The notes beneath the pieces were generated by a model. That model did not search any database and was not told the DNA's origin. It saw only the letters and a program-made list of their open reading frames with translations. From Zygophlyctis sp. KS116 (taxonomy: Eukaryota; Fungi; Chytridiomycota): DNA of 22,364 nucleotides. Of this stretch, positions 1,003 to 21,902 are shown piece after piece. The translations under genes were made by a program, and so were the position numbers. How positions within the stretch are numbered: position 1 is the stretch's first letter; each line of letters begins with the position of its first letter. The stretch is taken from the NCBI GenBank assembly GCA_054661495.1, contig BAAFSQ010000164.1, positions 1 to 22,364 of the forward strand, given 5' to 3'.

Positions 1003-2220
1003 ATGTCTCACTGCAAGTACGAACATCCTCGTCATGGATCTCTAGGATTTCTCCCTAGAAAGAGAGCCCGAAGACATAGAGGAAAAGTAAAGTCTTTCCC
1101 AAGGGATGATGCCTCCAAACCAGTCCACTTGACTGCATTCATGGGTAATATCATCTTTACTGATTATAGGTTATAAGGCTGGAATGTCTCATATTGTCAG
1201 AGAATTAGACCGCCCAGGATCTAAAATGCACAAGAAGGAAATTGTTGAAGCTGTGACTGTTTTGGAAACTCCTCCAATGGTTATTGTTGGTATTGTGGGC
1301 TACGTTGAGACTCCAAGAGGTCTCCGATCGCTTGCTACTGTCTGGGCTGAACACTTGTCTGAGGAAGTAAAGAGAAGATTCTACAAGAATTGGTATAGAT
1401 CAAAGAAGAAGGCTTTTACCAAGTATGCCAAGAAATTCACTGAAGCTTCAAAACCTGTTGAACAGCAGATGGAAAGAATTAAAAAGTATTGCCAAGTCGT
1501 TCGTGTTTTGGCTCATACTCAGGTTAAAAAGGTTAAAATTGGTCAGAAAAAGGTAAGGGGTTTTTTTACTAAGTTTAGGCCCATTTGATGGAAATTCAAT
1601 TGAATGGTGGTTCTGTTTCAGACAAGGTTAACTGGGCTAAAGATCATTTTGAAAAGACTGTTGATATTCACTCTGTGATGGAACAAGATGAAATGGTTGA
1701 TGTTATTGGAGTTACTAAAGGTCATGGATTTGAAGGTGTGACTGCTCGTTGGGGTACAAAGAAACTTCCTAGAAAGACTCATAAAGGTCTTCGAAAGGTT
1801 GCTTGTATTGGTGCTTGGCATCCATCTCGTGTCATGTACACTGTTCCTCGTGCAGGTCAAGATGGTTATCATCATAGAACTGAAGTTAACAAGAAGATTT
1901 ATAGACTTGGAAAAGCTAATGATGCTGCAAGTGGATCTACTGAATTTGATTTAACTGCTAAACCTATTACTCCAATGGGTGGATTCCCTCATTATGGTGT
2001 TGTCAATGAAGACTGGATCATGTTGAAAGGATGTACTCCAGGTGTTCGTAAGCGAGTGGTTACTATCCGTAAATCTCTTTTAAATCATACCAAACGTTCT
2101 GCTTTGGAAAAGGTTCAACTCAAGTTTATTGATACTTCCTCTAAATTCGGTCATGGTCGCTTCCAGACTACTGAAGAAAAGACTACCTTTTTTGGTACTC
2201 GTAAGAAGGATTTAGCTTAA
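1003..2220 (+). CDS. RPL3: 60S ribosomal protein L3 (uL3), 388 aa, 3 exons
   Basis: Exons 1003-1144, 1170-1552, 1579-2220; introns 1145-1169 (25 nt) and 1553-1578 (26 nt, TACTAAG). Splicing restores [21 protein letters not shown]...[10 protein letters not shown]...GQKKAHLMEIQ...[13 protein letters not shown]. Confidence 0.98.
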
Positions 2221-2255
2221 AGAGAATTAAAAATACACAAAGTGTCTTGAAATTT

Positions 2256-3243
2256 CTATTTTTGTTGAAGCTTACTCTCTAATGCCTTAAGTCCTAAATT
2301 CCTTCTTCTTTCAGCATCAACTTCTTCAGAAAATAATTCTGGAGTCTTTAAATTTATCCCTTGTAAATTTTCATCATTATCTGTCTGATTGTCTGACTGA
2401 TTATCTAGAGGAGCATATCTAGAAGCACCAGGAATAATCTTCATTTTTAAACCAATTTCAAATAAAAAATTTGAAACTGGAGCCAAATATGTGCTAATAT
2501 TAAAAAATCTAAATTACTGTGTTGATTCTGGAAAGAAACTTAAAATTGAAAAAGTTTCACTTCTATCTCCTAGAATCCCATCTCTCCTTTGATAAAACCT
2601 TAAATATCCCCATGAACCCAGTATCCCACACCATCCTTGATAGTAGTTTACTAAATAGTAATAAAATGTAGAAAACGGAGGACTATCCAAAACTGCAAAA
2701 AAACTTGTCATAAATCCAATCCCTGAAATTGCTAAAATTGGTAATACTTTTGTCCGAAAGGAAATGTAACCACCAATTAATAAACGATGTTCTGGCACTA
2801 ATTGTTTATAAGCCACTAAAAACCCAAAAATGACACAATTAAAACCATAAATTGGAGTAAATCTAAAATTATAAATTTGCAATATACAGTATTTGTGATC
2901 CCATAAATAAACTGGAGAGTAATACCAGAAAAATCAAGAAAATCTGTGACACTGCCGTAGAAATCCATAAATATCTAAATAATTCAGCCATTCCCCAAAC
3001 ATTTTCAAAGTATTTTAGAGAAAACATTAAAAACATAATCCCTAGAGGCAAATTATAATATTCGGACACAAATGTATTCGTGAACATTGTCCATGGCGAC
3101 CAGCCGATAGCACCAACTCCTTGTAAAACTAAAAAATCTCTAATCAATGGTAAATTAGCAACTAGAATAACAGCAAGAGAATATTTAGAGAGTAAAGTCA
3201 GATTATTAAAAGACTCTTTGACTACCGAAACAATTTTGTTCAT
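2256..3243 (-). CDS. TMEM115: TMEM115/DUF1751-like multi-pass Golgi membrane protein, 3 exons
   Basis: Introns 2863-2887 (25 nt) and 2494-2517 (24 nt) join three ORFs. Family-like motifs PWTMFT, VAYKQLVPEH, SWGYLRFYQ..GDRSETF..SFFP and DAERRRNLGLKALE. Confidence 0.85.
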
Positions 3244-3467
3244 CGCTGTTTAATTTATTTGCGCTGAATATTCTCGGTTTACTCTCCTACTCTATTTACT
3301 CTGTTAAATCTGTTAACTGGAACTCATGGGGGATGCATGGGGATTCAAATGGAATGGTGAAAAATAGAGTAATAATGGTCATTGTATTTTATTCTGCGTA
3401 GATCTCATTATAGTCAAGACTCGTTTGAGGCCACCGCCAAGTCTCGAACCCGCGGCCTTGATTTTAA

Positions 3468-6400
3468 ATGCAACTTGTGTCAATTCTTTCTAGACTTAAT
3501 GCAGACTCTATTTCGCCTCCTGTATCAGTTGTACATGAATTAATTCAATGGATCTCAACAGGGAAACTATCGGAAAATGAATTGGGAAGTTGTTGGCATT
3601 TAATGAGTCAATTACTAAGGAAATATCCAAAATCTGTTACCGACTTGCGACCATTGGTTTTGGAATTTATGGTTGCATGTATGACTCATCATTCAATAAG
3701 AATGGGTCCAATATTATGGAAGGAATTTTTGAAATTTGCTAGTACAGATTGGGATGGAATTCAGGATTTAAATTCTAGGATTAAGATTATAATTCAATTG
3801 ACAAAAGATGGGAGAGATGTTTCAGGGATTGAAGAGGAAATAGGGTCATTGTTGGCATCTTGGTTGGAGGAAATAGTATTGCACGGCGATTATAATAATT
3901 CTGTTTTATTATTGGGATTTATTACAAATATTTTCAAGTTTTCTAGGTTATATCTAGATAAAGATATGGTTTACCGACTCTTGGGACTAAATAGGAAATT
4001 TTTAGAAAGGAATGCAAGTGATCAGGTTATTACTGCTGCATTACAATTGTATTTCATTTATAAATTCTAAAAAGTTTATAGATATGATGCGGTTACAAGA
4101 TATGGTGGAATGCCAGAGTCGTGTTTAGAGTTGATTGCTCATGGTTTAATAAATCTAGATTCAAATCAGGAATTAACACAATCAATTCTTAAAAATATAT
4201 TAGGTTCTCATTTATCAAGTGCTTTTGTAAAAATATTGGTGGATTATTTACATGGAGATGCAGAAAAAGAGTTTTACACAATACAGAATTCAATAAAACT
4301 ACTCTCGGTTTGGAAATGGAAAGAAAAGGAAAAATTGTTGGAATGGAATTTATCAGATTACTTGCTATTGTCATTCTTTCCGAAATTAATGCAATTTGAG
4401 AGTTTTTTGGATCTGATTTTGGAATCTATTGCGTTTTTTTTAGACTCAAAATCTCCTTTGATAATTGAATGGAGTCTGGTTATTCAATGTTCTTGCTTTA
4501 TTATTCCTAAAATAGTTGGGAAAGGAGAGGCAGTCTATAAATTCTCAAAAAATTCAAAGTTGGACCAAGATCCTTCAATTAAAGATTCTATAGAGTTTAT
4601 TTTACAGAAGATAATGTTGAATTTTGATACGCAAAGTAGGTTGAAAATTGTATAATTAAATTAGTGACTCAAGATAAAAAAACCTTTTGTAGGCTTTTAT
4701 TGGATATTTTGTCGTACTTAGATGATGAATGGGGTCTTTTTCTGATTCAAAAGGAAAATGATTTACAATTGCTGACACATTTAGTGTCTTTACTACTTAA
4801 AAGAGATGAAAAGAGTTTGGTTTTTCAGATTTTAGAAAAAATTGATCAGTTTCCGTTTATAGAAATTTCAGATATTAATAGGCTTGTAGATTTATTGATT
4901 TTAGTGGAAAAAGATGATGTATTTTCAAATTTGTTACGAATATGTCTTCGAATTCCAAGTTCTGAATTACTAGACCAACTATCAAAAATTCTTGAAACAC
5001 ATCAAAATGAAGATGTTAGGATGATGGCTGCAAAGGGCATAACTTGTATCTGGGATTGGTTTTGTGAAACAAATTCTCCAGAAAAAATGGATTCGGCGAT
5101 TGATACATATAGGCGTATTCTTTCCCATTTCACAGATGAAAAACTTCCTAAAAATACTAGAATTTATTTTGGGAAATTTCTCTGTGGATTTAGAGCTATT
5201 CGTAAACGAGTCAAATATTTAGATATGGATAAAGGAATTGAAAGGATTTGCTTTTTTATCAATAGTGAAAATACTGTCGAGGGCACCAATCTCTCGATAT
5301 TGCCATTGGGCGAGTACTTGCCAAATTTGAAAAACTTTCTTAATCGAGAGCCTAATTGGGATGTATATCATGCAATTTTAATTGAACTTCAGCCTCAGCT
5401 TCACGATTCTATCATGTTTGATACTTTAGAAGGAAGAAAATTTTTAGTGGACTTCACCCAATCTCTAATAACAATGATTCAAACTGATACGGTTGGAGCG
5501 CAGCTAATCGATGTACCTTCCAATTCTAAAGCATCAGATTTTGTATCTGTATTTCTGAAACTCTTGGCTGGACTTATTCAGTCATATAAAAATCTGTTTA
5601 TAAAAAAGAATTTAGATGACGCTGTGCTCTGCTTCCTTTCTGGTTTATCTCGGCCAAGTCTTTCACGATTCTGTATGCATTCACTTACAATTGCTATTTA
5701 TGAATCTCCTTTTAGTATTATGAAATACCTCTCTTCAATACTCTTAAAATTATCTCAAATGACTTCTTTATTGCAAGGGATTGAAAATCTAGAATTTTTA
5801 TCTCATTTAGGTAAATCTCAAACTTTACATGTGAATCTTACTGAAGACGATTATAAGCGGGTATTTGGGATTGCACTCCAGTATTTAAGAGTAGAAACGA
5901 ATGAAAGTGTTCAAAGCAAGTATATTGTTCATTTGGCTCATAAAGTTTTGTCTCTATGGTTTGTCAACTTACAAATACCTGAGCGCAGAATATATCTTTC
6001 TTTCATAACTAAACAGTTGATGATAAATGGGCTCAATGAAACAGTGGAGTTGGTTCTTGACACGCTGGCAATTTATTCTTTTTCAGATTGTGAAGCTCGA
6101 TCTCAAATAAGCAATAATTCATCTGGTGGGAAAACCTGGCTATGGGGGAATACACTAATCACTATTAATAATCACCCTAGCAGTGTTGAATGGAATGAAA
6201 TTACAATTCGGAGACCGTCTGGAACATTATTGATGCATAATCGTTTAGAAAATTCCTTTATATCAGATCAGCAGCCGTATATTCCCGCAGCAATGTCATA
6301 TCTTTTAAAAAAGTGTGAATCGCGTGAGGCGGAAATCGAAAAAAAGCAACATATGAGATCTTTCTCGACTGGATCAGTTCATTTGGCCAGTTTACAAGAA

Positions 6401-7399
6401 CAAAGGAGCAGAACACGTCAAATTAGTTCAGGTAGTAGTACCTCATCATTCTTAGTTCATAAAAGACGCTCTATTTCTGCGTCAAGCCATAACAGCCTAG
6501 TTGGCGGGTCTGTTCTTGAAGAGTCTGATACTTCCCTATCAAATTTAGATATGGATTCTTTAATGTCTAGGGATAAAAGAATCGATCCTTCTTTTGTATT
6601 AGCTCAAATGATTGGAATTCCAAATACGTTTATGACTGATAATTCAAACTTGCCTTTTTTACTTCCAGGAGATGAATCAGTTTCAAGAGCACTCTCAGTT
6701 TTGGACAGAACTCCAGTTCTTGATCTTCACAAGATTGGAGTACTTTATATTGACAAACTGCAAAAATCTGAAACCGAAATATTAAGCAATACTTGTGGCT
6801 CTAAAGCATATGGTGACTTTTTAGAGAGTCTTGGGACTTGGTTCCTATTAAAAGAATCAGGAAGCCTATATTCAGGAGGTCTAGATACCAGTTCTGAAGC
6901 ATTAGATGGTCCTTTTGCACTTACACATGCTGATCGACTATCTCAATGTGTTTTTCATGTGACAACAGTGATGCCTTCTTCTCCTAATGATCCAATGTCA
7001 ACCTTGAAGAAGCGTCATATAGGTAATAATTTTGTAAACATTTTATGGAATGAATCTGGAATTGAATATTCAATGGGAACTCTTGAAGGTCAATTTAATT
7101 TTGTAGCCATAGTTATTCAACCACTTTCAAAAAAAGAATTTACAGTCAAAGTATTAACCAGAAAAGACATTCCAAATCACTTTTTATTTTCTGAACCACG
7201 TTCAGTCTCACTAAAATGTCTGGGAAGTATAATTAGAACATTGGCTATTCATTGTGACACTTTTTCTCAAATGTGGATCAATCGTTTTGTCTCTAGTCCT
7301 AAAGAAAGACTAACACAAATTTATAGACTTCGAGATCGCCTATCAATTTCAAAAACCAGTGAAATATTTCGAATGCATGATTTTAGTCTCTACTTATAA
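3468..7399 (+). CDS. TSC2: Tuberin (TSC2), Rheb GAP, about 1289 aa, 3 exons
   Basis: Introns 4049-4081 (33 nt) and 4636-4664 (29 nt). C-terminal RapGAP domain HKIGVLYID..EILSN..GS..GGLD..VFHVTTVMP..KKRHIGNNFVNILWNE; tuberin-type motifs LTKDGRDV, EITIRRPSG, RALSVLDRTPV. Confidence 0.93.
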
Positions 7400-8056
7400 A
7401 TCCTTTTTCTTATTTTCAAACTTTTCAAATTCTTTTAGAGAAATTTCCTCGACTTCATCCAAAACTTGAGCGACACCTTGAACTTCTGGTAAATAATGCA
7501 TCAACATATTTTCAATCCCATGTTTTAAAGTAATTGCTGAAGAATCACAAGTTCTACAACTTCCTTTTAATTTTAGAGAAACTATTCCATCTTTAAATCC
7601 CATATATTCCAAATCCCCACCATCTTCCATGATAGTTGGTCTAATTTTAGTTTCAATTAATTCCTTTATAGTCGCAACAACCTCATCATCCTCTGGAAGA
7701 ATCATTGTGTCCGATGGCCGCAGATCCTGAGAATCCTTAAAAATCGGTTTTTCTGATGAGAAAAAGTCCATCATTCCTCCAAATATTTCAGGTTTCAACA
7801 ATTGCCATGGAGTATCAGGATCCTTTGTCACTGTAATAAAATTAGGACCATAAAGTACTGATCTCACACCTTGAATTCTTAATAATGATGCAGCTAGCGG
7901 TGACACCGATGCCTCCTTGAGCGACAGAAATTCCCTTGTGCCACTTTCTAAAATTGGTTTTCCAGGTTTAAATTTGATAGAATCAATATTTGGAGTTGTT
8001 TCAGTCTGAATGAATAAATTTCGAACAAATCGCTTAATCGGACCTTGTAATTTCAT
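7394..8056 (-). CDS. NFU1: Mitochondrial Fe-S scaffold NFU1
   Basis: First ATG at 8056 (the track starts at an upstream TTG). Basic presequence, then LFIQTETTPN, and a NifU C-terminal domain IRPTIMEDGGDLEY..GSCRTCDSS.ITLKHGIENML with CxxC. Confidence 0.95.
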   Translation of the reverse strand: MKLQGPIKRFVRNLFIQTETTPNIDSIKFKPGKPILESGTREFLSLKEASVSPLAASLLRIQGVRSVLYGPNFITVTKDPDTPWQLLKPEIFGGMMDFFSSEKPIFKDSQDLRPSDTMILPEDDEVVATIKELIETKIRPTIMEDGGDLEYMGFKDGIVSLKLKGSCRTCDSSAITLKHGIENMLMHYLPEVQGVAQVLDEVEEISLKEFEKFENKKKDL

Positions 8057-8640
8057 TAGTTTAGATTCAACAAATTTCAATTTTCAATTTTTCTAGAGAC
8101 TTATAATGATTTAATTTTGGTTTAATATTAAGTTTTATATCCTTTAACAGTACCGGCAGCAGCCCATCACAGGAACGTGTGTTTCCAGTTATAATTTCCG
8201 CAAATTCTACCTCTATGAGTCAAGCATCATCTGCGGTGACTAGCAAAACTCAGGCGACAGGATTAATTCCCACAAGGATAAGACTAAATTAAAACTAGAT
8301 AAGTTGAGAACAAGCCTTCGAATTCAGCTCAATACAATATGCAGTATGCTTATAATTATTAATACTTTGAAAAATTTTGTGGTAGAAAAGTGGTTCCATA
8401 TACAAATCTATCAAGGTGGGAATATCAATTTACAGGAATCCCTTTAGAACTTGATCTTTCTAGTTTTTCTCGTTTACATAGAGTGGATTTGAATAAACTT
8501 GCAAAGAAACTAAATGCAGGAACAATTAGTAAATGAAGAGTCTTCATAGATCATAGAAGCTACGCGTTCAGATTGGTATTGACTCCCATGACTGATAATA
8601 TATATAAATACATCTCATTTCTCTAAATATATCATTAAGT

Positions 8641-9213
8641 CATTTAAGACAGTGTACTTGGTATATTGATTGGCATTAAACCATACATGCAAGGTACTGC
8701 AGCAGGGCAGCACCTTGAGGACATCTGTGAGTATAACATTTTGACTATGAGGGGTTTTTGAATGATACAATGCATTCGTATACTGAGTTTGAAAGCGGTA
8801 TCATAATTTCATCGTGAAGAGAGAGAAACAAATCTTTGAGGTAGGTTCAATCGGACAGTACCCATGCTTTAAAATACACTCCAGTCTTTGAGATTCATTA
8901 TAACACACGCTCCAGAAAAATCACAGCACGATATGAAGACATTTCAGTGAAGATGTATTCTCTATCTTGTTGAGAATAGATCTAACACAGATAAATATTT
9001 TAGACTCCCCCATAAGATGAGATATTATCTGAGGTTTCCCAAACTTTGACGTTTTCAATAACATTCTCCTTGATTTTATTTCCAAGACCATTTCTTCTCT
9101 TGTCGTCGTTGCTTTGCTTAGGCGGCCTCTAGCTTCAGATTCTAAAACTATTAATAAAGACAATTACCGCCATCAGTAAGTATAGTATTGATCCGCCTCC
9201 TTTTCCCTATCAT
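8641..9213 (-). mobile_element. Degenerate transposase relic, possibly KDZ (Kyakuja-Dileera-Zisupton)/CxC type
   Basis: Putative ATG 9213 (MIGKRRRINTILTDG) and a 26-nt GTAATT..TTAG intron at 9142-9167. One frame then continues through TGA stops and contains CILKHGYCPIEPTSKICFSL (like CxC 'LLxxGxxPxxPxxxxxFS') and LPCCSTLHVWFNAN (like 'CPxC...DxNF'). Resemblance judged by eye; no terminal repeats seen. Confidence 0.38.
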
Positions 9214-9505
9214 TAAATCCACAATTATAATGCAATGTCTCAAAGTCAACAGTGTGATCATTATCCGCCAAGTTATGAGAAAGCCGCATTCTCTGGAATT
9301 TCTCTCGGCCAGATATGTTTCTTCTTCTTTTCGCTCTGCTTTTTAACTTCTTCTTCTTATTTTTTGTAAAATTAAACAGTCCAATGCAACTCTCTCTTTT
9401 CAGAGAGCATTTATAGAAATCCGACCAACCAACTCTTGTTAATGTTGCTGGAGATTGCACGACAAATGTGTGCTTATGTCTGTAACGGCTCTTTCAAATT
9501 TTAGT

Positions 9506-9847
9506 CTAAAAGATCAAGAAAAAAAACTTCAAATTTGCAGAAAATATAACTGGACCTTCCAAGAAAGGTTCATATCCATTCGTAGCGCCCTCTAGTGCAA
9601 TTATTTTAAAATTATACAAAAAAGATTTCGGCAAGCATTGTACTGATTTGGGAATATATTGCCATTCAACCGCATATGATACTTTATTGAAAAGAGTTAT
9701 TGAGAATTTATCAGCAGCAGAGTATGGTATCAAAACTTCATCTGCATAAGTAATTTCCTCCGATTTGCTTCTGGTTCTTGGATCTGGTAGTCTTTCAGAC
9801 AGCCCATAGTATTGTTGTAGGAGCTGTTTTATTTCTGCATTATTCAT
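9506..9847 (-). pseudogene. Unidentified gene fragment
   Basis: ATG 9847 (MNNAEIKQLLQQYYG...) and an intron-like 26-mer GTATAA..CACTAG at 9592-9617. No splice choice I tried gives a long product, and no family was recognised. Confidence 0.25.
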
Positions 9848-10584
9848 TTTATTTTTAGAAACGATCGGTGCCACTCGCCACGATATTTGTGATTTGTAAT
9901 TATCCCGCCACTAGTCCAACAGCTTAAAAGACTCTGTCCGACAACTATTCCATAATTCTTATTCAATAAAAAATTGAGAAAAAGATCAAGAACATTTCTT
10001 GAATTGGATGATGTAGCACGTAAACGATTGTCCGAACTAGAGGTGGCTATTACTTCACAGCTGGGAAATGGAGCGTTCTTTCTTGTTGGTATGAAATCAT
10101 TTATTTTATTTTAAGCGATTTCTTTAAAGGAAATAGATGAAAAATGTTTATATGGTAAAGACTCAAAAGTTGGTGAAATTATGGTTTTCTGCAATCAGCA
10201 AGTAATATTCGACGGCGTAAAGGCGACACATCCATTCTTAAACTATGAAAAGATTGCACTTTTTTTGGTTTACAGTGTATTTTAAATGTACATCTAAATG
10301 TTTGTCCATACCTAAATTTGAGAATTCCTTTATGAACACTAGAAAGATTCAAAATTATGTGGTTTTCCTTGACTGAATAAGACTTATCATATGCAATAAT
10401 AAGCTGACAATCATTCATAAAAATCAATTCTAAGATTTGCATTTTCAATTATTTGCATGATTGGTCTTGGTATCAATAATGCAAATGATCATCAGTTGGA
10501 TAATTGAAAAATCATTTTCTCAAAATCTAGACAGTTCAAAATGATTTCTTCATTTTCAATTCAAGAATTTCAATTCATTTATGG

Positions 10585-12162
10585 TTAGCATTGTCGTATT
10601 AACGTCACTTGCGTACCAGTGTATCTACTATTTGTCAAAACTTGGTATTTCTTACACTTGCATTCTGCATCTTGCAGTAAAAGTGCCATTCAAACCAGGA
10701 TTGTTTTCAAGCCACCTGTTAATTTAAATTCAGAAAATAATTACAGCCAATTCAAATTCTGCAAACTACCAATTCCAACAGGAATTGAGCCTGAGAGTTG
10801 ATTGTTAGAAAGTTGACTTTTATTTAAGTTTAGAAAATAATTACAGAAAACGCAAATTTATCAAATTTCCAATCGCAGCAGGAATTGAACCTGAGAGTTG
10901 ATTGTCGTAAAGACGACTTTTATTTAAATTTAGAAAATAATTACAGATGAGTCAATTTTACCAAGTTTTCAATCTCTTGAGGAATTGAACCTGAGAGTTG
11001 ATTGTTGAAAAGTTGACTTTTCATATAAATTTAGAAACAAATTACAGGTCACGCAAATTTACCAAATTTCCAATCGAGGCAGGGATCGAACCTGAGAGTT
11101 GATTGCTGTCAAGATGACTTGAATTTAAATTTAGAAAATAATTACAGCCATTCCAAGTTTATCAAATTTCCGATCTCTGGAGGAATTGATCCTGAAAGCA
11201 CTCTATAAGACCAAATTATCCGAATAACATTGGTTTTAGTAGAATCACAAGTGATGCCAGACATAGGCATAGTACAACAACTGTTATCCGAAGATAAGAT
11301 CCCTGTAGGAATATATTTGGCCATTTTTGTCCATGATGCAAGAACCCAACAGCATTGGTGCGAAGTAGAAGTGCACGAAAAGCAACTAGACGAACTAGTC
11401 GACCCAGGAGAAGAATATTGACCGTCTGGACACAATGTGCAACTATTCGAATCGGCAGTAGATGAGTATTGACCTGCTGGGCAGGAATTGCAGCTAGCCG
11501 ACCCAGGAGAAGAAAATTGACCTGCTGGACACAAAGCGCAACTTGTTGAGCCAGCAGTAGATGAATATTGACCCGCGGGACACGATGCGCAACTAGTCGA
11601 GCCAGCAGAAGAAGAGTATTGACCAGCTGGACAAGAGGTACATTTGCCAGTAGAGGAAGAGTAAAATCGACCTGCCGGACAGTTTATATTAACTGAAGTT
11701 CCAGTCACATTTCTATGCATTTCATAAGAAAATGTATTACATAACCATTATATCTACTTGAGTAGTTGGCGGCGTGAAAGATCCATTCAATTGAAGATTA
11801 TTGGAAACGTCACTGTAGATTATAAGCTGTTTAAAAAGTTACAGTTGAGTTAACCTAGTCAACATTGCTAGTTCGCTGGGCATAGAATTCAACAGATTTT
11901 GAGCTGTCCAGTTTATCTTAGTAACTTTGTTAGTATCACAGGTCACGCCAGACATGGGCATAGTACAACAACTGTTATCCAAAGCTGAGATCCCTATAGG
12001 AATAGCTTTGCCCATCGCTTGCCATGATTTTACTGCCAAACAGCAGTGGTAGGAAGAAGAAGAAGAAGACTTTGTCGATTTGCAAGAACTCTGGGATTGC
12101 ACTCCAGAGATGATTCCAGACAGAGCTAAAGCTAAGAGAGGCTTGATAATTTCAAGTTTCAT
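10585..12162 (-). CDS. Secreted two-domain plant-type LRR protein with a Cys-rich (GCC2/GCC3-like) repeat linker, 449 aa, 9 exons
   Basis: Exons 12162-11843, 11812-11741, 11712-11146, 11117-11046, 11016-10945, 10916-10845, 10816-10745, 10715-10656, 10627-10585 total 1350 nt and are fully open. Introns are 28-30 nt, all phase 2. Signal peptide MKLEIIKPLLALALSGIISGVQS; LRR consensus LxxLxLxxNQLSGSIPxxIGNL; no transmembrane segment seen. Confidence 0.9.
10716..11145 (-). repeat. Tandem ~100-nt exon+intron repeat (4 exons of 72 nt, 5 introns of 28-29 nt)
   Basis: Invariant CAATCAACTCTCAGG in all four exons. Introns follow GTAATTATTTTCTAAATTTAAAT.AAG; introns 10817-10844 and 10917-10944 differ at 1 of 28 nt. 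Confidence 0.95.
11373..11681 (-). repeat. Six coding Cys-rich repeats (CPAGQYSS..GSTSC..), mostly 48-51-nt units
   Basis: Visible in the translation of ORF 11142-11720. A higher-order 99-nt duplication is shown by GACCCAGGAGAAGAA at 11401 and 11500. Confidence 0.9.
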
Positions 12163-12184
12163 TGTTTTTGAAAGAACAACTGGA

Positions 12185-12252
12185 ACGTCATCAAAGTATT
12201 AATCTTCCTTATGATACGTCATCAAAGTATGACATCCTATGATACGTCATCA
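12185..12252 (-). promoter_or_regulatory. Triplicated TGATGACGT (CRE/bZIP-like) element upstream of the LRR gene
   Basis: ACGTCATCA at 12185, 12216 and 12244, inside longer duplicated blocks (ACGTCATCAAAGTAT x2, TATGATACGTCATCA x2), 23-90 nt upstream of ATG 12162. Confidence 0.45.
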
Positions 12253-12625
12253 GCTTTCTTTAATGATAGTCTTTAACAAAGTGATCCAATTATAATATCT
12301 GAAGCTATTCTTTTTTTCATATTGCAGGTCAATGTATTTTACTTCCTGGTGCACTATCCAATGATAAACTCCCCAAAGCACCATGATTTGTCCCCGGAGC
12401 ACCACTATTATTTATGGATTACATGTTTAACATATCATAATAATGTTGATCATTCCTCAAATGCAAAAGAATTAATAATCTTCAATCAAGAAATCGATTA
12501 AAAATGCAAGAAAGTAGAGAAAACAATGAAGATAACGGGAAACAAACGGTTCTGTGCCGGAAAATAATGAGGATTTTTCCTGGTGCCGTTTGCAGCCCCA
12601 GTCACTGATTTTGGCGGTCAAGTTT

Positions 12626-12940
12626 ATGGATCATGAAATATTATTGGAATTGGCAGAGAATCCAAAATCTTTGCAATACTCTTGGGATAGTAATATTCGT
12701 CCGGTTTTAGGAAATTATTTTAGAGATTTTGGATTTGAGGATTTAATTGAATATTTAGAAAATTATTCTAGTCCTCCATTCACTATTCAAAGAATAGCAG
12801 AAATATTATTAAATCCTGCTCCGCTAAATATAAATTCTAAATGCAAGAGAGCTCTTGAAAAATGTCTTAAAGTCTCTACAACCATTAATCAGATTCAAAA
12901 CAAGGATTTAGAACTAAAGGATGACATGATGCAGCTTTAA
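12626..12940 (+). CDS. PPP4R2: Protein phosphatase 4 regulatory subunit 2 (PPP4R2/Psy4-like), minimal 104-aa form
   Basis: First in-frame ATG at 12626; signature PPFTIQRIAEILLNP...KRALEKCLKVSTT. Confidence 0.8.
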   Translation: MDHEILLELAENPKSLQYSWDSNIRPVLGNYFRDFGFEDLIEYLENYSSPPFTIQRIAEILLNPAPLNINSKCKRALEKCLKVSTTINQIQNKDLELKDDMMQL

Positions 12941-13630
12941 TATTGATTTTTTGATTTAAAAAATGTATAATGTAATACAATCTCTGAAACATCCTTCATC
13001 CAAGGATCAGATGCAAATTCTGGATCAATATAAAAGAAAACTGGCATATCTACTTCTTCTTTTGGTGCTAATTTTTGTTCCTCTAGAATTAAAATCTAAA
13101 AATTACCAAAACAAAAACATTGAATCTTGTTAAAATATTGAGCTGCTTTACCTGGTGCAACAGAATATGTAGAAATTCCAACAAGATCATTATCAGATGG
13201 ATTATAAGCCTTGAAAAAGGTTAATGCAGTTTCTCCTGGTACAACAGTTAATTGCGATACTTCTATTAGATTTAGATTTCTAAAAAGATTGAATACCTGG
13301 TACAAATTTCCATTTCATTTGATCAGAAATTGAAGATGTAAACTTTACCTTTATGGGTTTAGAGTCTGTAAGTGGTGTCATTGATTCCGGTTCGAATTTA
13401 TGGCCTATTTTAAGTCTATAGAGTTTACCAATGGAAGTTTTAGGAGTTCCGTCGAGTCCTGTTTGTGTACAAATCATTTGGTAAATTGGCACTGCAAGAT
13501 AACTTGCTCCAATCATTGCAACTATTAATGATGCTCCATAGTATAATGCAGTTTTGTTATCATGTTCTTTTTTAGTATTATATCCTCTTTTTAGAATCCA
13601 ATGAATTCTTTGACGATGAAATTTCAACAT
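12937..13630 (-). CDS. COX11: Cytochrome c oxidase copper chaperone COX11, 4 exons
   Basis: Introns 13405-13428 (24 nt), 13263-13296 (34 nt), 13083-13106 (24 nt). Motifs SYLAVPIYQMIC.QTG, VVPGETALTFF, YFNKIQCFCFEEQKL, EEVDMPVFFYIDPEF. The last exon is absent from the ORF track. Confidence 0.96.
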
Positions 13631-13665
13631 TTTGCAACACTACCGCAACCTCAAGAAGTGGGCTG

Positions 13666-16333
13666 CTAATTGTTTAATTGTAGCTGAAGATTTATAATCT
13701 AGATTTTATATTAAAGAAAAATTACCTGGACATTGACTCCTTTGACAGTGTCTGGAGGAATATCATCAGATTTTACACTTGTTTTCTAATATTTATAAAG
13801 TATTAAATACATTTAAAGTCAATGATTGGGTCCTAGGAATGGTTTGAGTTGTCCTTGGTTTAATTTTAGAGTTGAAAGTAGTAGATTGTCTGATTTGGAA
13901 TTTTTCTTTAGAGGTGGTTGGAGTGTCCGATAATTTTGAAGGTTTGGATTTTATCTTGAATGAATTGGATTTTGTTTTTAGTTTTGATTTACGTTTTATA
14001 ATTCGTAGTCCTTCTTCATCAGAAGAGGTGTCAGAGTCTGAAGATCCAAAAGTTTCAAGAAAATTTGAATTTCCTTGTCCGATTTCCTCTTTAATTTTGG
14101 AAAATATACTATTGACTAGAGTATTTGTAGATTTGATTTTATGGTTTAGAGGTTTTATTTCTGATTCTGCTGCAACTGCAACAGGAACAGCAACTGCGCC
14201 TGCACCTGTGATTATATTTAGTGGTGGATTTTCAATATAGAAATAATCATAGAGTGTCCGACCAAACATTTGTCCCATATTTTCTAAATGTTGTATAGTA
14301 TAAAAGAATCCCTTGTCTATTCCAACATCGGATCCACAAAATGAGGCTTCCATTGTAAAACTATTTGTAATTCCAAAATTCTTCCAAAGTGCAATCTAAA
14401 ATGTTTAGATTACAAGGATAAATTACTCTTCCTGTTCCTTCCTTGCTTTTTTGGATCTTGAATTGACACTTTTTAAAGAAAAATAAGTCTGGTGCTCTTT
14501 GAGATAAAAGGAATGGAAAAACTCTTTCAGAATGGCGTTTTTCTTCATCATGATCATTATGACATCCATACATAAAAATTCCATTTTTTCTATTATGTCC
14601 CTAGCTTTAAAGGAAAGATAAATTACATGTAAATCACAATATAAAACTATTTCTCGTTCTTCTAGGAGTCGGCTGATCATGCTTTTTACTATATTGACTT
14701 CTGGTGCACCAGCTAGATTTGATAACCAGTGACGATTAAGATCATAACCATTTAAATTACATCTATGATTTCCTACAATAACTCCATCTAAAGTTTAGAT
14801 TGAATAGAAATTATACCTGGGTTAACCATTGGAATTACTCTGATTATAAAGTTATCTCGAAGATATTTAGCATGAGAATCAGAACTTAGAATAAATTCAA
14901 GGAATCCTCTCATCATCCAGCTGGAATTGGTTTCTCCTGGATGAGCTCTAGCAGAAAGTACAATAGCTTTTCTAGATTTAAGATGTTCAGGAGATTCTGC
15001 TTTAGATGTAATACTAAGCATATCAATATAATTGCCTCCAAATGACTTTCCTAATATACTATGCTTGAATAATTCGGACTTTTCAGAATCTTTTTTGAGA
15101 TTGTGTATATATAATTGAAGATCTGAGTAAGTATATGGGAAACAATGGGCAAAATATACTGTATCATTATCATGCTTAAATCTGGCTGAAAAAGAAAGAG
15201 TATTAAGCGGCCGTTTTGATTCCTCATCAATCTTATTTGGAGCGTATGTCACATCAAATCCGATTCTTTGCCATCCTATTTCTAACATTAGATCATATTA
15301 ATTTACTATTTTCTTCAAAATTTCTATTTGAAAACATTAGAGGTCGCATTCCTTTTGCGTATAGACAATTAGGCTTCATCAAATTAATTATATGAAATCG
15401 ATAAGCTGTATTAGCCTTGATATTTTTGACTTGAAAATAGAACCACTGAGTATGTCCGTGCGTACTTAAATCAGGGCGCACGGTAAGAATATAAGCATCC
15501 TTGTCTAAACTAAGTTTTAACATATAAGGCATTCATTTACATTTTTTCAGCCTTTTGGAGATTTCCAGATTCGAATCTGGACTCGAATAATAGCGTGCAA
15601 TCGTTTTGATCCTTCAATGAATAACATTGTTCCTATTATATTAATAAATAGAGTCTACATTTATTTTTGAGAAGTCGGCCTGATATACAACTGTAGTAAT
15701 GGCTTTGGCTAAATCAGGCGCCTCTGATAATACTTTTCTTGGATCAAACTTTTCAATCGTTTCATTAAAATATTCAGGATATGATACTTGCGGACTTGGT
15801 AAGGCTGAATTCATTTGTTTTGGCCATTTTGGTGCAGGTTTTTCTTCATAGATGGATGATAATGCTTTTGGACCTTTGATGATGACATTTTGCTTTTCAG
15901 GGATATCATTAGGTGACGATTCAATTGGATTCGTGATTTCTATATTATCCAATACTAATATAATTAATTACTATATCAACTTACTTTGTAACTCTTTAAT
16001 CTTTAACTCGTCGATCTTCTGTTCCTTTCGGACATCTAAACTTGGAACAGCACTTTGGTTAGGGGTATTTGCGGCTCTTTCAGGTATAATTATATGTTGA
16101 TTTTGTTCTTCATTTTTCTCTGCAGGCATCTCTTTAGCCTTCATTAAACTCTGATCTTTGTTTTTGGGCAATGGCAAGGGAGTTGGCTTTAATTGTTTCG
16201 ACTGATTAATCTCCTGCTGCTTGATCAATGGCCTACTAGGCGGAGTCACAGCATGTACAGCAGGTGTCTGATTCTGTATCATTTCAAGTGGGGAAACTTT
16301 AATAAGTCTGGAATACTTTTTTCTTGGATCCAT
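13666..16333 (-). CDS. Cytosolic carboxypeptidase (Nna1/CCP/AGBL family, M14D tubulin deglutamylase), 10 exons
   Basis: Introns 15955-15984, 15633-15658, 15510-15540, 15282-15306, 14788-14816, 14601-14626, 14396-14426, 13786-13810, 13699-13725 (25-31 nt). Splicing restores FESRFESGNL, HTQWFYF, PYTYSDL, ARAHPGETNSSW, NPDGVIVGNHR..DLNR, DLHGH and FTMEASF. The last two small exons are less certain. Confidence 0.93.
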
Positions 16334-16361
16334 CAGGCTTAATACAAAGTTGGATGACGTA

Positions 16362-17655
16362 CTATCTATTATGAAAACTACGTTTGCATGATAAACTACA
16401 AAACTTGTATAATAATGGTAATGATATAATTGGATGCATATTTATGAATTCAAGAGAGAAATATGTGAACTTGTCGCAGTCGCTTGAATGCGTAAATATG
16501 TCTGTACATTGATCGCAAAACGTGAATTTTTGTCGATTGAATCTCCATCCAACCTTTGATATTCCTTTCAAACCTATTTTATTTATGCACAGAGTTTCAA
16601 GTGAAGATATGTATGGGAATGTAAACGTGCTTTTCTTTAACAGATTATTATCTGATAGATTTAGTACCCGACACTCCAACTCCTTGATTCTTGATGTAAT
16701 TGTCATCAATTTATTGAAACTTAGATCCAAATATCTGATTTTTGATTTGATGGTCTTATCGTAATCCATTTGATCACCAGTTAAACATTTCAAATCATTG
16801 TTTTTCAAATTTAAATATTCCAGATTTGGTAGATAGAGAATGCTTTCAGGAACATAAATTATATTATTTGATGCAGCATCAAGCGTTTTTAGATTCTTTG
16901 GCAGCTGATCATAATCTATCTTTTTAATATTATTGTTGAATATGCTGAATGTGTTCAAATTTGGAAAGAAGTGAAGCCCAAAAAATGTTTCTAACATGTT
17001 GTTACCCAATCCCAGATCACATAAATTAGATAAATTTACAAAAGAAGGAGCCAATCTTTTCAATTGATTATTACTTAAATTTAGCCACATCAAAGATGAA
17101 AGATTTCCAAAACTTCTAGGAAGATTTGTAATTGCATTCCCACTTAAATCTAAAGTCTCCAAGTTTGTAAGATTTCCAAAAGCACAAGGCAATTGAGTGA
17201 TATCATTGTTACATGCAATCAATGTCCGAAGATTTAAAAGATTCGATAGTGTTGCAGGCAACTCTTGTAGTCCACAATATCCGATTGACAGAATTGCCAA
17301 TTGATCTAATCTATCAATACTAATAGTCAGATTATTGATTGGATTGTATGATATATTTAATGCTTCGAGTGAAAACTTCAAAAGTTGCGGGGGCAATACG
17401 CTGAGCTCATTATGAGAAATATCCAAGATCTTCAATCCGTACAGATTCTCGACAATCAAATCATCCAGACTGGTAAAATCTGTTTTTAATGGTTGCATAA
17501 TTACGATTAAATGAAATGTCAAGTTTGCGGATCTCATCCAATCGCTGATCAAAATCGATTGGAAGCTGCCGAAGAAAACAATTCGATAAATTCAAATTCC
17601 AAAATTGATTCTCCTTCTTGTCTGGATAGTATCCTAGTGATAATGATGAGCCCAT
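16362..17655 (-). CDS. Cytoplasmic LRR protein with an N-myristoylation motif and an LRRC58/LRRC28-like Cys-containing C-terminus, 2 exons
   Basis: Intron 17480-17504 (25 nt) gives KLDISFNHFTSLDDL and joins the two track ORFs. Starts MGSSLS, has multiple LxxLxLSxNxL repeats, and ends SLETLC...FCDQC...LPLLYKFCSLSC. Confidence 0.85.
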
Positions 17656-17746
17656 TCAACGGTTTTTGAGTGACGAAACTCAATGTCTAAAATGTCCGAA
17701 AGTTGTGTGCATTTACATTTTAATTATTTATTTTAAATTTTGAGAA

Positions 17747-19072
17747 TCAGCATAGAGGAGGCACATCTGGATCATCAACAAAATCACATGGTATAGTTTT
17801 TTCGGATTCAGAGGATCTTACATCCACAATCCCTCTTTTTAAATCAATTTTCTGATCTAATTTGACTTGCTCCAAAATATTTCTAATATTGACAGCTTCT
17901 TTTGGCTCAAATAAGCGGTCATATCTTCTATTTCGACCTTTTTCTGCTTTTAAAGCTTCTTTTTGAAGCGCATCTTTCTGCCGAGATTCAATATATTCTT
18001 CTTGGACAATTTTTTTCAAATCCTGATTTGTAAATTCTGATTTCAGCATTGTTAGTAATAAATGTCCGGTGGCTTTACTTCTTTCACAAATAACTGAAGA
18101 TACTTGAATGTCTTGAGAAGTTACAAGTTGTAAAATCTTGTCTTTTATGGTAACTCTAACCCATTTTTCATTTAAATCTACATTTACAAGACTTGTATCT
18201 ATAAATTTTGAAATTTCTACATCCAAAACTAAAGTTTTACTTGTTTCGGACCACTTAAAATTCCATTTTCCTTCATTTTTTTGTAAGATTCTTCCATCTT
18301 TAGTGAATAGTAAATTATCCTTTGAAACTTTTTCCTTTTTCTTTGCATTTTCAGGCTTCTCTTTAAGTTTTTCATAGTCTCTAGCAGCCTGCAATCTTGC
18401 TTGTGGAGTGTGAGGAGTTAGTTTAGTCTGAAATCCACTTCTTTTTTCTTCTATTCCTTCTTCTGGCTCTTCTGCTGCAGGAGCGATTTCTAATTCTAAT
18501 TCATTCGGAGATCCCAAATCCTCTTTTTCTTGTAAAAACCGTGATTTTATCTCTTCAAACTCTTGTCTTGCTTCTATTCTTTCAGAAATTTCAATTTCTC
18601 TAGAGTCCAAAATCTTTAATTGTGGCAAAACTGTAATCACGAATTTCCTATATCCTTCTTTCAAAGTACACGGATTTCCTGTTAAATATAGCTCTCTTAG
18701 CCTTTCTAATTTGACCAAAGATTCCACATCCAGAGGATTTTTAATGAAATTGACTGTTAAATCCAACTTTTCCAATGACTCTAGTCCTTGTAAATTTTCA
18801 ATTTTTGTAATATTATTCAATGCAACCTGAAGATATTTCAGACTTTTGAGTTTAGACAGATTTTCTAGCTTTGAAATTTGGTTATTCTGAAGATAGAGTA
18901 TTTCCAAATTTCTTACCAACTCCAGATTTTCTATTTTCTCGATATCAAACTGATGTAGAGTAATTTCCTTTAGAGTAGTTAGTTCTCCGTCATTATGCTC
19001 TGCTCTTTTCTTTAATAGCTGTAAAGTAACTAGAATTTAGTAATAAGTCTCAAATATACTTTTCTCGCCCAT
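17747..19072 (-). CDS. DNAAF11: Dynein axonemal assembly factor 11 (LRRC6/tilB), 2 exons
   Basis: A 13-nt first exon (19072-19060) and intron 19030-19059 (30 nt) give MGEKITLQLLKKRAEHNDGELTTLKEITLHQ. Also LEKLDLTVNFI, LYLTGNPC, CS-like QKNEGKW..ERSKATGHL and terminal DDPDVPPLC. Confidence 0.95.
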
Positions 19073-19105
19073 CCAAGTTTCTCTTTCTAGTCGTTTGCGG
19101 AGAAA

Positions 19106-20418
19106 ATGAATAGAAATCTTTCTAGTCTTCCTTTTGAAATACAAACAATGATTCTTCAATTCCATATCGGCATAGAGGATTTCAAAGTTGTCCTGAAATG
19201 GATGCAATTGAATTCATTCTTTAGAAACTTTGTTGTTGGAAACTCTAGTCTGATTTCTAAAGTTGATCTTATCAATGATTGTTTGAGTGATTCTAAACTG
19301 TACAAATTTCTAAATGTTTTCCAGGGGCATGCAATCCAAGAAATGAATTTAAGTGGAAATTGTGAACTTTCCTTTGAATCGGTTTTAATCATTCTCGGCA
19401 AATGTCGCAATTTAAAAAAACTAGATTTACAAGATTGTTGCAGGATTGATATTTTTGAATTATCTTTGAATATTAAGTATATTCAACAGGAAAATTGTCT
19501 AGAAATTTCACAGTTGAAATTATTGCATTCAGGACTTGGAGACTCTTACTTTTGTAGAGTGGCACTAGAAAGATTACAAGTTTCTCAAAGAAAAAAAATA
19601 TTAGAGGCTTCTTCAAGAATAGAAAATCACCTGAAATTTCTGTCTAAAAAGAAATTTGAACTAGAACCGTAAGTTTATCTTCTTTAAACCTCTAATTCTT
19701 TCAGGTGTCTGAAACCCCTACGGCCACAGTCTGCTTAGGGTCTGGACATCTGAAATCTGAAAGAGATCTAATAGATTTTTTCTCGTCGCACAAATTACTA
19801 ACTAAAAGTGGGCCATGTTTAAACTGTAATGATCAGTTATCAATAGAATTCATTCCAAAATGTAGAAAATGTTTTAAAAAATGTAAAAGAGTTTGTGGCT
19901 ACTGCCAACCACAAACTTTTAGAATTTGTGCAGAATGTCTCTATACGGTTTGTGTAGACTGTGATGGAGGATACAAGTACTATGGTAAAGATGATAAACA
20001 AATCCAATCTCAAGATCAAAAATTAGTGAAATATGGAACAAATAGCTTTATCTTTCCAAAATGTTCTCTCTCAATCTGTTATGAACACAATGGAAGATTA
20101 GAATTTCTAAGATCAATGACTGTTTGTAGAAATTCTTGTCTAGATTTCAATCGTAATCAATGTTACAATTGTGGATATTGGGTCTGTCCGAGAACAAGAG
20201 AATGTCATTATGAAATAGGAGTCTTGAAAAGTATAAACAGACTCGTAAAATATTGTTCTAAATGTGATTATGGATTTTGTGGAGTTTGTACAGACAATTC
20301 ATTAAAATCATGTGGTGAATGCAAAACTAAATGTTTTTATTGTATTGAAATGGGTATAGACTGTTTATTTTGCAAACAAAGCATTTGTCTTGAATGTAAA
20401 GAAATTCACAATTGCTAA
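19106..20418 (+). CDS. F-box/Cys-containing-LRR protein followed by a long CxxC-rich zinc-binding region (junction unresolved)
   Basis: F-box LSSLPFEIQTMIL, LRRs IQEMNLSGNC and LKKLDLQDC, and a downstream ORF 19705-20418 with many CxxC pairs and no upstream ATG. The obvious intron 19669-19704 (36 nt) does not connect the two frames. Confidence 0.65.
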
Positions 20419-20471
20419 CTTGAAATTTAGCGATAATATTGCATTTATACATTTGTGAAAAAAGTTGCAAA

Positions 20472-21351
20472 TCAAGATATTTTACATTGTGAGACTTGTT
20501 TGAGACTTTTGATAGGAACCGTACTTGGTAGTAAAATAAGCCACCACGGATATTCAGGAGAAATACTAAAAAAATCGACAATATTATCTCTCCATCCAAA
20601 ATCATACTAGAAATTGAGTAAAAATTAAAATACAGGATTTACAAAATCAGCTTCTAATACTGCTTTTGCAACTTGATTTCCATAAAATTCTATTGTAGTT
20701 TGTCCTGTAATAATTAACCAAGATTGCCAACCACAAAGAGTTAAAAGTGCACTTCCAGCTAATAAAGCTACTAAAAAAGAAAACAAAAACAGTCCCCTTG
20801 CTTTTGGAAATGGCCATAACATTGATGAAGTCCCTAAAGACCAAAATTCCCTATAAAATATAGGAAAACCATCAATACTAATCATTATACAAGCAATAGT
20901 TAAATAGACTATAAAGAGATAAAAGAATCGATGGTTAGCTTTCCCAACACTATAATGAATACTTGAAAAATTACCAATTATTAATCCAAGGACAATGATG
21001 ATCCATTTTATCAATGCAAGAATTACATACAGAGCAATGATGAACTCTAAAACCCTTTTTCTCTGCACAAACTGCACAAGTTGGCAAATCTAAATCATCG
21101 GCAAGCGAATGACTGTATTTCACATTTATAGTACATGATTGGTAGAAATTAAACAAAATTAAAAGAAAAATGTGCGATGATAAACTGATTCTGACGGCCC
21201 AAAACAATGAAAATGGTTTTTGAAATAAAACGACGAATAGATACACCCAACCGATAATGATTATTAGCAGCGGTGCCATCAATGCAAGCACAGGCCCCAA
21301 ACTACGAGCTATAATGTCTAAAACTGAAGCAAATCGTCGCAGAGAAATCAT
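20472..21351 (-). CDS. DHHC palmitoyltransferase, 3 exons
   Basis: ATG 21351; introns 20950-20974 (25 nt) and 20607-20633 (27 nt). Splicing restores [42 protein letters not shown] and [10 protein letters not shown]. Confidence 0.93.
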
Positions 21352-21467: not shown

Positions 21468-21902
21468 TCATTTAGGGATAGCTAAGCTAGAAATATGACT
21501 CTTGATAAGTCCCAATAGATGAGAAGTAACAGTAACAAAAGTTCTTCCATTAAAGGATGGGAGTTGAGTTCCGATCAATTGTTGGGTTGCTAATTCACAA
21601 GTAATTGTAGGGACATGATCAACTGTTAAATAAGAAGATCCTCCGCATTGATAAAGAAAAGCCTTCCAGTCATTGTTTACAAATTGTAAGAAATTCTGTA
21701 AAGCAATTCGGCAGTTTTCAGGATTTTCAGCACATACTTTCTCAAGATTGTTTACACTTTCATAATATGGATGACCATTGATGTTTGCAATAGTCTGTGA
21801 AGTTTCAGCCTGTAAAGTTTCTAAACTAGAAAATACTGCTACACTATTGACTCCAGTCATCAATGCAATAAAGAACAAGATCATCTTAATATTGGCCATC
21901 AT
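21468..21902 (-). CDS. Small putatively secreted protein of unknown function
   Basis: Intronless ORF from ATG 21902; hydrophobic leader KMILFFIALMTGVNS; four cysteines in the mature part. Confidence 0.65.
   Translation of the reverse strand: MMANIKMILFFIALMTGVNSVAVFSSLETLQAETSQTIANINGHPYYESVNNLEKVCAENPENCRIALQNFLQFVNNDWKAFLYQCGGSSYLTVDHVPTITCELATQQLIGTQLPSFNGRTFVTVTSHLLGLIKSHISSLAIPK

What the first reader, a model, noticed from the sequence alone, without database searches (positions are those of the whole stretch)
10585..12162. Cassette-built secreted LRR protein: all introns phase 2, one 72-nt exon per LRR
Seen: all 8 introns are phase 2 and all 7 internal exons are multiples of 3 (72, 567, 72, 72, 72, 72, 60 nt). 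Any exon can therefore be lost, duplicated or swapped in frame, and six donors cut the same Leu codon (CT|N). Every intron starts GTAA, so retention gives an immediate NNG-TAA stop. Known: one-LRR-per-72-nt-exon architecture occurs in plant ERECTA/SERK-type receptors and in brown-algal ROCO genes proposed to diversify by exon shuffling. Inference: a miniaturised combinatorial recognition system (host, prey or parasite sensing) in a zoosporic fungus, missed by ORF callers. With such small introns, DNA-level unequal crossover or conversion is more plausible than exon skipping.
Basis: partly seen in the sequence, partly recalled or inferred. Interest (0 to 1): 0.86.

Follow-up and report, generated by a model that had tools for sequence, protein, structure and literature searches.

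The report
Scrambled LRR gene on mobile island
A lake fungus carries dozens of genes for secreted binding proteins whose repeat units are remixed by ordinary DNA recombination in pieces smaller than an exon, and this copy sits in a 4.4-kb transposon-like insertion that a close relative lacks, which points to a fast-changing recognition repertoire in a kingdom thought to have few such proteins.

Summary
The gene model is right (minus strand, 9 exons, 449 aa, eight 28-30 nt phase-2 GTAA introns), but the phase and stop argument is weak. There are only two independent intron positions, and tiny introns are genome-wide. Only exons 4-7 are LRR cassettes. The gene belongs to a large family of predicted secreted plant-type LRR proteins, with no transmembrane helix or kinase seen, in an unnamed freshwater chytrid: at least 81 N-caps, 292 cassettes, arrays of 1-23. 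Concave-face codons are hypervariable. Exons are not shuffled whole: linkage is gone beyond about 35 nt, and 45-90 nt identical tracts between genes end without preference for introns. That indicates conversion and unequal crossover on a 100-nt period. New here: the gene lies in a 4,426-nt insertion (8166-12591) between NFU1 and PP4R2, absent in a 96.5%-identical strain, with a 7-nt direct repeat, asymmetric inverted ends and a hairpin. The scan found this family before on other DNA of this genome (s1-560669). Ligand, host and expression of this copy are untested.

The parts
11843..12162 (-). Exon 1: signal peptide, Cys-rich N-cap of module 1 and its single LRR
   Evidence: N-cap profile matches the capping region of plant receptor ectodomains and PGIP; highest 19-residue hydropathy 1.76 at residue 3
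11741..11812 (-). Exon 2 (72 nt): C-cap of module 1, not an LRR cassette
   Evidence: no Pfam hit; aligns to C-cap stretches of intronless relative L072
11146..11712 (-). Exon 3 (567 nt): end of C-cap, six intron-free Cys repeats (Ephrin_rec_like/TNFR-like, 48-51 nt period, about 11393-11680), N-cap of module 2 and its first LRR
   Evidence: PF07699 E 1.9e-19; tandem repeat; 65% identity of the N-cap to L072
10716..11145 (-). Cassette array: exons 4-7 (72 nt, one plant-type 24-aa LRR each) and introns 3-7 (28-29 nt), period 100 nt
10585..10715 (-). Exons 8 (60 nt) and 9 (43 nt): C-cap of module 2 and stop; no transmembrane helix, no KR-linked tail
   Evidence: same ending in C701, C53, C855, C770
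12163..12528 (-). Upstream region, 98.6% identical to sister C626; holds a 28-nt tandem repeat with TGACGT motifs (12185-12252); 12528 is a recurring homology boundary
8166..12591 (.). 4,426-nt insertion holding the gene, in the short gap between NFU1 and PP4R2; absent in L068/L069
8159..8165 (+). Left copy of the 7-nt direct repeat GCAGCCC
12592..12598 (+). Right copy of the 7-nt direct repeat; single in the empty site
8168..8191 (+). Left arm of an imperfect inverted repeat, 2 nt inside the junction; homology to contig C391 begins at this base
12533..12556 (-). Right arm of the inverted repeat (20/24), 35 nt inside the junction
   Evidence: 0 of 1500 random pairs reach 20/24
12543..12592 (+). 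Stem-loop at the right end
   Evidence: DNA fold -12.3 kcal/mol, z -2.5
8192..10584 (.). Rest of the island: patchwork of multi-copy fragments, including the 5' end of an unidentified multi-copy ORF family (9506-9874); no transposase recognised

Best explanation
The gene encodes a secreted two-module plant-type LRR binding protein (signal peptide, capped one-repeat module, six Cys repeats as a rod-like spacer, capped five-repeat module). It is one member of a family of dozens. Diversity is made in inherited DNA by in-register unequal crossover and short-tract gene conversion on the 100-nt exon+intron period, within and between genes, with breakpoints anywhere in the repeat. Selection keeps the framework and favours change on the concave strand, which each intron splits. 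Shown: anatomy, family size, variable counts, sub-exon mosaicism, position-specific hypervariability, presence/absence of the locus. Inferred: secretion; binding of variable foreign proteins, most likely from an algal host or another interacting microbe, as an adhesin or PGIP-like neutralising binder rather than a signalling receptor; arrival of this copy with, or inside, a non-autonomous transposon-like element.
For: 81 N-cap matches on about 55 contigs; 292 cassettes, 287 distinct, arrays of 1-23. Exact 3- and 4-cassette duplications in C610, C43, C778. Sisters with 2, 4, at least 8 and 10 cassettes, 2-12 Cys repeats, 2-3 modules. Entropy 3.2-3.9 bits at concave positions against 0.2-0.8 at framework positions; pN/pS 1.9 against 0.11. 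Mean r2 falls from 0.052 at 1-3 nt to the null (0.007) beyond about 35 nt. Exact tracts of 45 nt or more between contigs: 32 against 2.1 expected, with background identity outside them. Upstream DNA 97-100% identical to C626, cassette array 76-80%. No transmembrane or kinase part in the window gene or in intronless relatives. Fold of relative L075 matches plant receptor ectodomains and PGIP. Empty site, direct repeat and inverted ends.
Against: No RNA or protein evidence for this copy. Host and ligand unknown. pN/pS is only about 1.2 when the concave codons' own pS is used, and conversion violates the assumptions of the test. Short-read collapse of near-identical sisters may have blended the window's module 1 and upstream region (single-copy-depth contigs of run X1 differ there). 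Only one filled site with both ends was seen; no transposase in the island; the ends fit no tested superfamily fully.
Confidence: 0.68

Rival explanations
1. Whole-exon shuffling: recombination in introns moves intact 72-nt cassettes, and phase-2 symmetry is what makes the system work.
For: Strict 72-nt, phase-2 cassettes; introns nearly identical between genes, up to 28/28; one 90-nt shared tract covers an intron and most of an exon.
Against: Halves of one exon unlinked (Mantel r -0.01 and -0.03, p 0.62 and 0.77); none of 9 tracts of 55 nt or more holds a whole exon, 5 hold a whole intron; tract ends 52 in exons, 9 in introns, as expected by length; intron-free Cys repeats vary too.
Confidence: 0.12
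2. The proteins are defence or non-self sensors of the fungus (against Rozella-like parasites, viruses or bacteria), possibly paired with a membrane partner, rather than host-directed binders.
For: Same diversification pattern as candidate immune receptors of brown algae (PMC3341825, PMC11378527); the sequence data cannot tell host from enemy ligands.
Against: No signalling or membrane domain found; many relatives carry a KR-linked Cys-rich tail typical of processed secreted proteins; one LRR locus neighbours a P-loop gene I read as Crinkler-like (not tested).
Confidence: 0.3
3. The island is not a transposition of the gene: a short element inserted first, or break repair made the insertion, and part of a tandem LRR unit (8802-12528) was copied in later by ectopic repair.
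For: Boundaries at 8802 and 12528 recur in C626 and L095; run X3 keeps the right end but has 750 other letters behind it; earlier notes of the scan report repair-like insertions with direct repeats of many lengths in this genome (not tested here).
Against: Inverted arms and hairpin sit at both junctions, and the 19-nt core occurs only three times in the genome, the third where homology to the left end begins. This supports an element but does not show that it moved with the gene.
Confidence: 0.45
4. Programmed or somatic cassette assembly (VLR-like) or exon skipping makes the diversity within one individual.
For: Many joints that add or remove whole cassette periods in contigs of four runs.
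Against: The joints can be paralogues; no orphan cassette library stood out (most single cassettes lie next to an N-cap or at a contig end); 28-nt introns favour intron definition and make skipping unlikely (own knowledge).
Confidence: 0.05
5. Much of the mosaic pattern is an assembly artefact of collapsed repeats.
For: 1175 contigs, many ending in arrays; summed contig depth over the gene is many times single-copy depth (not a copy number).
Against: Linkage is lost within 35 nt, far below read length; cassettes differ by about 25%; run X1 holds 10926-11140 without a difference; frames and splice sites are intact in the scored cassettes.
Confidence: 0.07

Closest known systems
Brown-algal ROCO and LRR-kinase genes (PMC3341825, PMC11378527)
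   Same: One 24-aa LRR per 72-nt phase-2 exon, intra- and intergenic recombination, variable repeat number, diversifying selection on the concave face.
   Different: No ROC-COR or kinase; signal peptide and Cys caps; introns of 24-30 nt, so the unit is a 100-nt period; mosaicism below exon size; no splicing variants shown.
[quoted passage not shown]
   Same: Arrays of fixed-length exons with phase-2 introns from clonal expansion and unequal crossing over; association with mobile DNA.
   Different: 30-aa repeat against 24-aa plant-type repeat; there a LINE-like element, here a DNA-type island with inverted ends.
Plant extracellular LRR proteins: receptor-kinase ectodomains (MIK2, FLS2, ERL1/2, SERK) and PGIP
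   Same: LxxLxLxxNxLSGxIP repeat, Cys N-cap and fold; PGIP is also secreted and LRR-only.
   Different: No membrane anchor or kinase; tandem capped modules joined by Cys repeats; no named close relative in protein searches.
Secreted LRR family of Spraguea lophii (PMC3749934) and high-copy LRR-RLK-like groups of a Lobulomycetales chytrid (PMC13618815)
   Same: Expanded LRR families in early-diverging fungi or their kin, proposed for host interaction; 37 of 52 Spraguea proteins have a signal peptide and no membrane helix.
   Different: The passages read report no cassette exon structure, conversion mosaic or mobile island; homology not tested.
Helitron2-type elements (PMC5148889) and Dada transposons (PMC3706591), for the island
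   Same: Helitron2: asymmetric inverted repeats, 3' arm 20-40 nt from the end, hairpins, gene capture. Dada: 6-7 nt duplication and subterminal inverted repeats.
   Different: Helitrons make no target duplication, this site has a 7-nt repeat; Dada elements with defined ends target small-RNA genes; no transposase found in the island.

Membership tests
Plant-type LRR receptor kinase / receptor-like protein | 24-aa plant-specific LRR with Cys N-cap | tested here: met
   fold of relative L075
Plant-type LRR receptor kinase / receptor-like protein | Transmembrane helix, with or without kinase | tested here: not met
   No hydrophobic 19-mer after the signal peptide in the window gene or at the ends of intronless relatives
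ROCO (brown-algal type) | 72-nt phase-2 LRR exons with concave-face diversification | tested here: met
ROCO (brown-algal type) | ROC-COR GTPase domain | tested here: not met
   Gene ends after the C-cap; Pfam shows only LRR and Cys repeats
ROCO (brown-algal type) | Alternative splicing of LRR exons | not testable with these tools
   No RNA run of this organism
PGIP-like secreted LRR inhibitor | Signal peptide, LRR only, no anchor | tested here: met
   (hydropathy only; no signal-peptide predictor available)
PGIP-like secreted LRR inhibitor | Inhibits an enzyme of the interacting organism | not testable with these tools
   Needs biochemistry
VLR-like somatic cassette assembly | Incomplete germline gene plus flanking orphan cassette library, somatic assembly | tested here: inconclusive
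   Complete genes and no clear orphan library in 40 fetched regions; the assembly is fragmented
Helitron2 / Helentron | Asymmetric inverted repeats and terminal hairpin | tested here: met
   criteria from PMC5148889
Helitron2 / Helentron | No target-site duplication | tested here: not met
   7-nt direct repeat at both junctions, single in the empty site
Helitron2 / Helentron | Rep-helicase in the element or an autonomous partner with the same ends | tested here: inconclusive
   Genome has Rep and PIF1 matches, none on C164 or C391
Dada transposon | 6-7 nt duplication and subterminal inverted repeats | tested here: met
   criteria from PMC3706591
Dada transposon | Dada-type DDE transposase; small-RNA gene target | tested here: inconclusive
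   No Pfam hit in island ORFs; the target lies between two protein genes; no RNA-family scan or Dada profile was run
Crypton / KDZ element | Tyrosine recombinase or KDZ transposase linked to these ends | tested here: inconclusive
   Both families occur in the genome, none on C164 or C391

The most novel reading that the evidence does not exclude
Uncultured freshwater chytrids keep an antibody-like repertoire of secreted LRR binders, remixed by micro-conversion on a 100-nt period and moved between chromosomal sites as cargo of an undescribed DNA element (asymmetric inverted ends, hairpin, 7-nt duplication); strain-specific repertoires set host range in chytrid-phytoplankton arms races.
Probability: 0.2. 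Interest if true: 0.85.

Novelty: new variant of a known kind. Interest (0 to 1): 0.63.

Why it matters
A survey of 49 fungal genomes found only fifteen predicted secreted LRR proteins and almost no LRR receptors (PMC2939053). This 12.7-Mb chytrid genome alone has at least 81 capped modules and 292 cassettes with a hypervariable binding face, and other freshwater assemblies hold the same architecture. How chytrids recognise their hosts is an open question (own knowledge); a repertoire that differs between strains in sequence, repeat number and presence gives direct candidates. The data also show that a one-repeat-per-exon layout need not mean exon shuffling: with 28-nt introns the exon is not the unit of exchange. 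The empty-site allele gives a simple PCR test of mobility.

Tried and rejected
The fold is of a natural intronless relative, L075, not of the window protein. The search of protein representatives with exon 3 was swamped by unrelated giant Cys-repeat proteins and told nothing about the N-cap. Ten hits of the end motif in viral contigs are chance (no identity beyond the core). Island ORFs gave no Pfam or Atlas identification. Selection for a retention stop: rejected. My first reading that run X3 lacks the gene: withdrawn, since its contig ends in a repeat and shows only a different right-hand interior. The outgroup did not polarise the site: relatives at about 78% have a TAF1A-like gene there, which lies on C176 in this genome. 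The sigma-70 scan does not apply to a eukaryote.

Full report
Observation. The gene lies on the minus strand from 12162 to 10585. Translating each exon in its own frame and checking each junction codon gives nine exons, 1350 nt and 449 aa without a stop. The joined protein was not used in any search, alignment or fold; all searches were exon by exon by reference.

What the regularity is worth. Exon 2 is 72 nt but is the C-cap of a first module, not an LRR. The protein is: signal peptide, Cys N-cap with one repeat, C-cap, six Ephrin_rec_like Cys repeats (E 1.9e-19), second N-cap with one repeat, four cassette repeats, C-cap, stop. The eight introns are copies of two positions. Predicted housekeeping introns in the window are 25-35 nt with mixed phases and GTAA in 7 of 17, so the single-gene statistics are unremarkable. 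In-frame stops are not enriched in 3n introns of the family (50/54 against 174/177), so a selected safeguard against retention is not shown.

Organism. NFU1 from the window has its best named relatives among chytrids at 60-65% and closer unnamed relatives in metagenomes. The window carries DNAAF11. The DNA occurs in freshwater runs of 12 studies, none of them RNA. It is an unnamed freshwater chytrid with a 12.7-Mb assembly in 1175 contigs.

Family. The cassette DNA has 99 matches and exon 1 has 81 matches on about 55 contigs. In 40 fetched regions plus the window there are 292 cassettes of 72 nt in phase 2 on 37 contigs, 287 of them distinct, in arrays of 1-23, with introns of 24-30 nt. Close sisters vary at three levels: cassettes (2, 4, at least 8, 10), intron-free Cys repeats (2 to 12) and modules (2 or 3). 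Exact repeats of 3 or 4 cassettes in C610, C43 and C778 record recent unequal crossover. JGI contigs hold relatives at about 64-77% nucleotide identity: four with the same cassettes and 27-32 nt introns, and 19 without introns, which begin near the start codon, often end A-rich and look like transcripts (library type not confirmed). These support the spliced reading and the two-module layout. None shows a membrane helix or kinase at its end; many end in a KR site and a Cys-rich tail that the window gene lacks. The N-cap profile and the predicted fold of relative L075 (mean pLDDT 79.7) match plant receptor ectodomains and PGIP. Protein searches found no named relative.

How diversity is made. 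Five positions on the concave strand (22, 23, 1, 3, 4 of the cassette, split by the intron) have 3.2-3.9 bits of entropy, framework positions 0.2-0.8. Concave pN is 0.62, which is 1.9 times pS elsewhere in the exon and about 1.2 times the class's own pS; the framework ratio is 0.11. This fits diversifying selection but is a rough test. Exons are not inherited as units. Left and right halves of one exon are unlinked (Mantel r -0.01 and -0.03), with weak linkage across the intron (r 0.075, p 0.03). Mean r2 decays from 0.052 at 1-3 nt to the null beyond about 35 nt. Yet exact tracts of 45 nt or more shared between contigs number 32 against 2.1 in a column-permuted null, identity outside them is background (0.734 against 0.736), and their ends fall 52 in exons and 9 in introns, as length predicts. 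Excess long tracts without long-range linkage is what conversion gives, not independent mutation or clonal descent (inference). The window gene and C626 are 97-100% identical upstream and 76-80% in the array. The working unit is the 100-nt period; phase symmetry is a by-product of duplicating it.

The island. An ENA contig, 96.4-96.9% identical over 15 kb, has NFU1 and PP4R2 135 nt apart; window 8166-12591 is missing (L069 is probably the same sample). A 7-nt repeat, GCAGCCC, stands at both junctions and once in the empty site. An imperfect inverted repeat (20/24; 0 of 1500 random pairs reach this) lies 2 nt inside the left junction and 35 nt inside the right, with a stem-loop at the right end. 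Its core occurs three times in the genome, the third on C391 exactly where homology to the left end starts. Contigs of runs X1 and X2 support the right junction; run X3, identical over 1.47 kb of flank, keeps the right end but has 750 other letters behind it. The interior is a patchwork of multi-copy pieces without a recognised transposase. The ends resemble Helitron2 (PMC5148889) except for the duplication, and Dada (PMC3706591) except for target and enzyme. Helitron, KDZ and Crypton-like genes exist in the genome but not on C164 or C391. I give about 70% to a transposon-derived frame, and even odds that the gene moved with it rather than being copied in later.

Function. The best reading is a secreted binder of variable foreign proteins: signal peptide, no anchor, stable capped solenoid, hypervariable concave face, gain and loss between strains. 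A host-directed role (adhesion or neutralising a host protein, like PGIP in reverse) is preferred to defence at roughly two to one. This step is inference; no ligand, host or expression data exist for this copy.

Comparison and novelty. One LRR per 72-nt phase-2 exon with concave selection is known from brown-algal ROCO genes (PMC3341825, PMC11378527), and a 90-nt version from Tetrahymena (PMC6564038). LRR expansions are reported in a microsporidian (PMC3749934) and a chytrid MAG (PMC13618815), while most fungi have few (PMC2939053). My searches found no paper describing such cassette arrays in fungi, which is not proof of absence. The gene fails membership of ROCO and of receptor kinases but works like their LRR domains. 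The scan already reported this family on other DNA of this genome (s1-560669); the sub-exon tract analysis and the empty site are my own tests. Verdict: new variant of a known kind, interest 0.63.

Limits.

Noticed in passing
window 1145-20974: Housekeeping genes (RPL3, TSC2, COX11, a carboxypeptidase, a DHHC gene) have predicted introns of only 25-35 nt.
   Followed up: partly
L070:5981-7087 and G000:C176:18098-19192: A TAF1A-like gene sits between PP4R2 and NFU1 in relatives at about 78% identity but on another contig in this genome, so the same intergenic site was rearranged before.
   Followed up: partly
window 9506-9874: ORF whose first 37 residues match the starts of 345-371 aa frames on C88, C252 and C45; family unidentified.
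   Followed up: partly
L075, L082, L083, L085, L087-L089 C-termini; L040, L047: Many family members end in a KR site followed by a mainly helical Cys-rich domain of about 130 aa; absent from the window gene.
   Followed up: no
L050:3142-4983 (G000:C69): A 613-aa P-loop protein with a nuclease-like end, which I read as Crinkler-like, lies next to a three-module LRR gene with a long low-complexity linker.
   Followed up: no
window 12185-12252: 28-nt tandem repeat with three TGACGT motifs upstream of the start codon, shared with C626 and C583; candidate bZIP sites.
   Followed up: no
window 16362-17552 and 17747-18919: Two other LRR genes in the window (an SDS22/RAS-type LRR protein and DNAAF11) have no cassette structure and are conserved in L068 and L070; unrelated to the family.
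   Followed up: partly
window 19106-20418 and 21468-21923: An F-box-like LRR ORF, a 237-aa Cys-rich ORF and a 151-aa probably secreted ORF without convincing Pfam hits.
   Followed up: no
L023 (G000:C583) 1770-1942 and L042 (G000:C626) 1-49: Pieces of the island's interior (9811-9971, 8802-8850) lie upstream of sister genes, suggesting head-to-tail arrays of the unit; summed contig depth over the gene is 4-60 times single-copy depth and differs between runs.
   Followed up: partly
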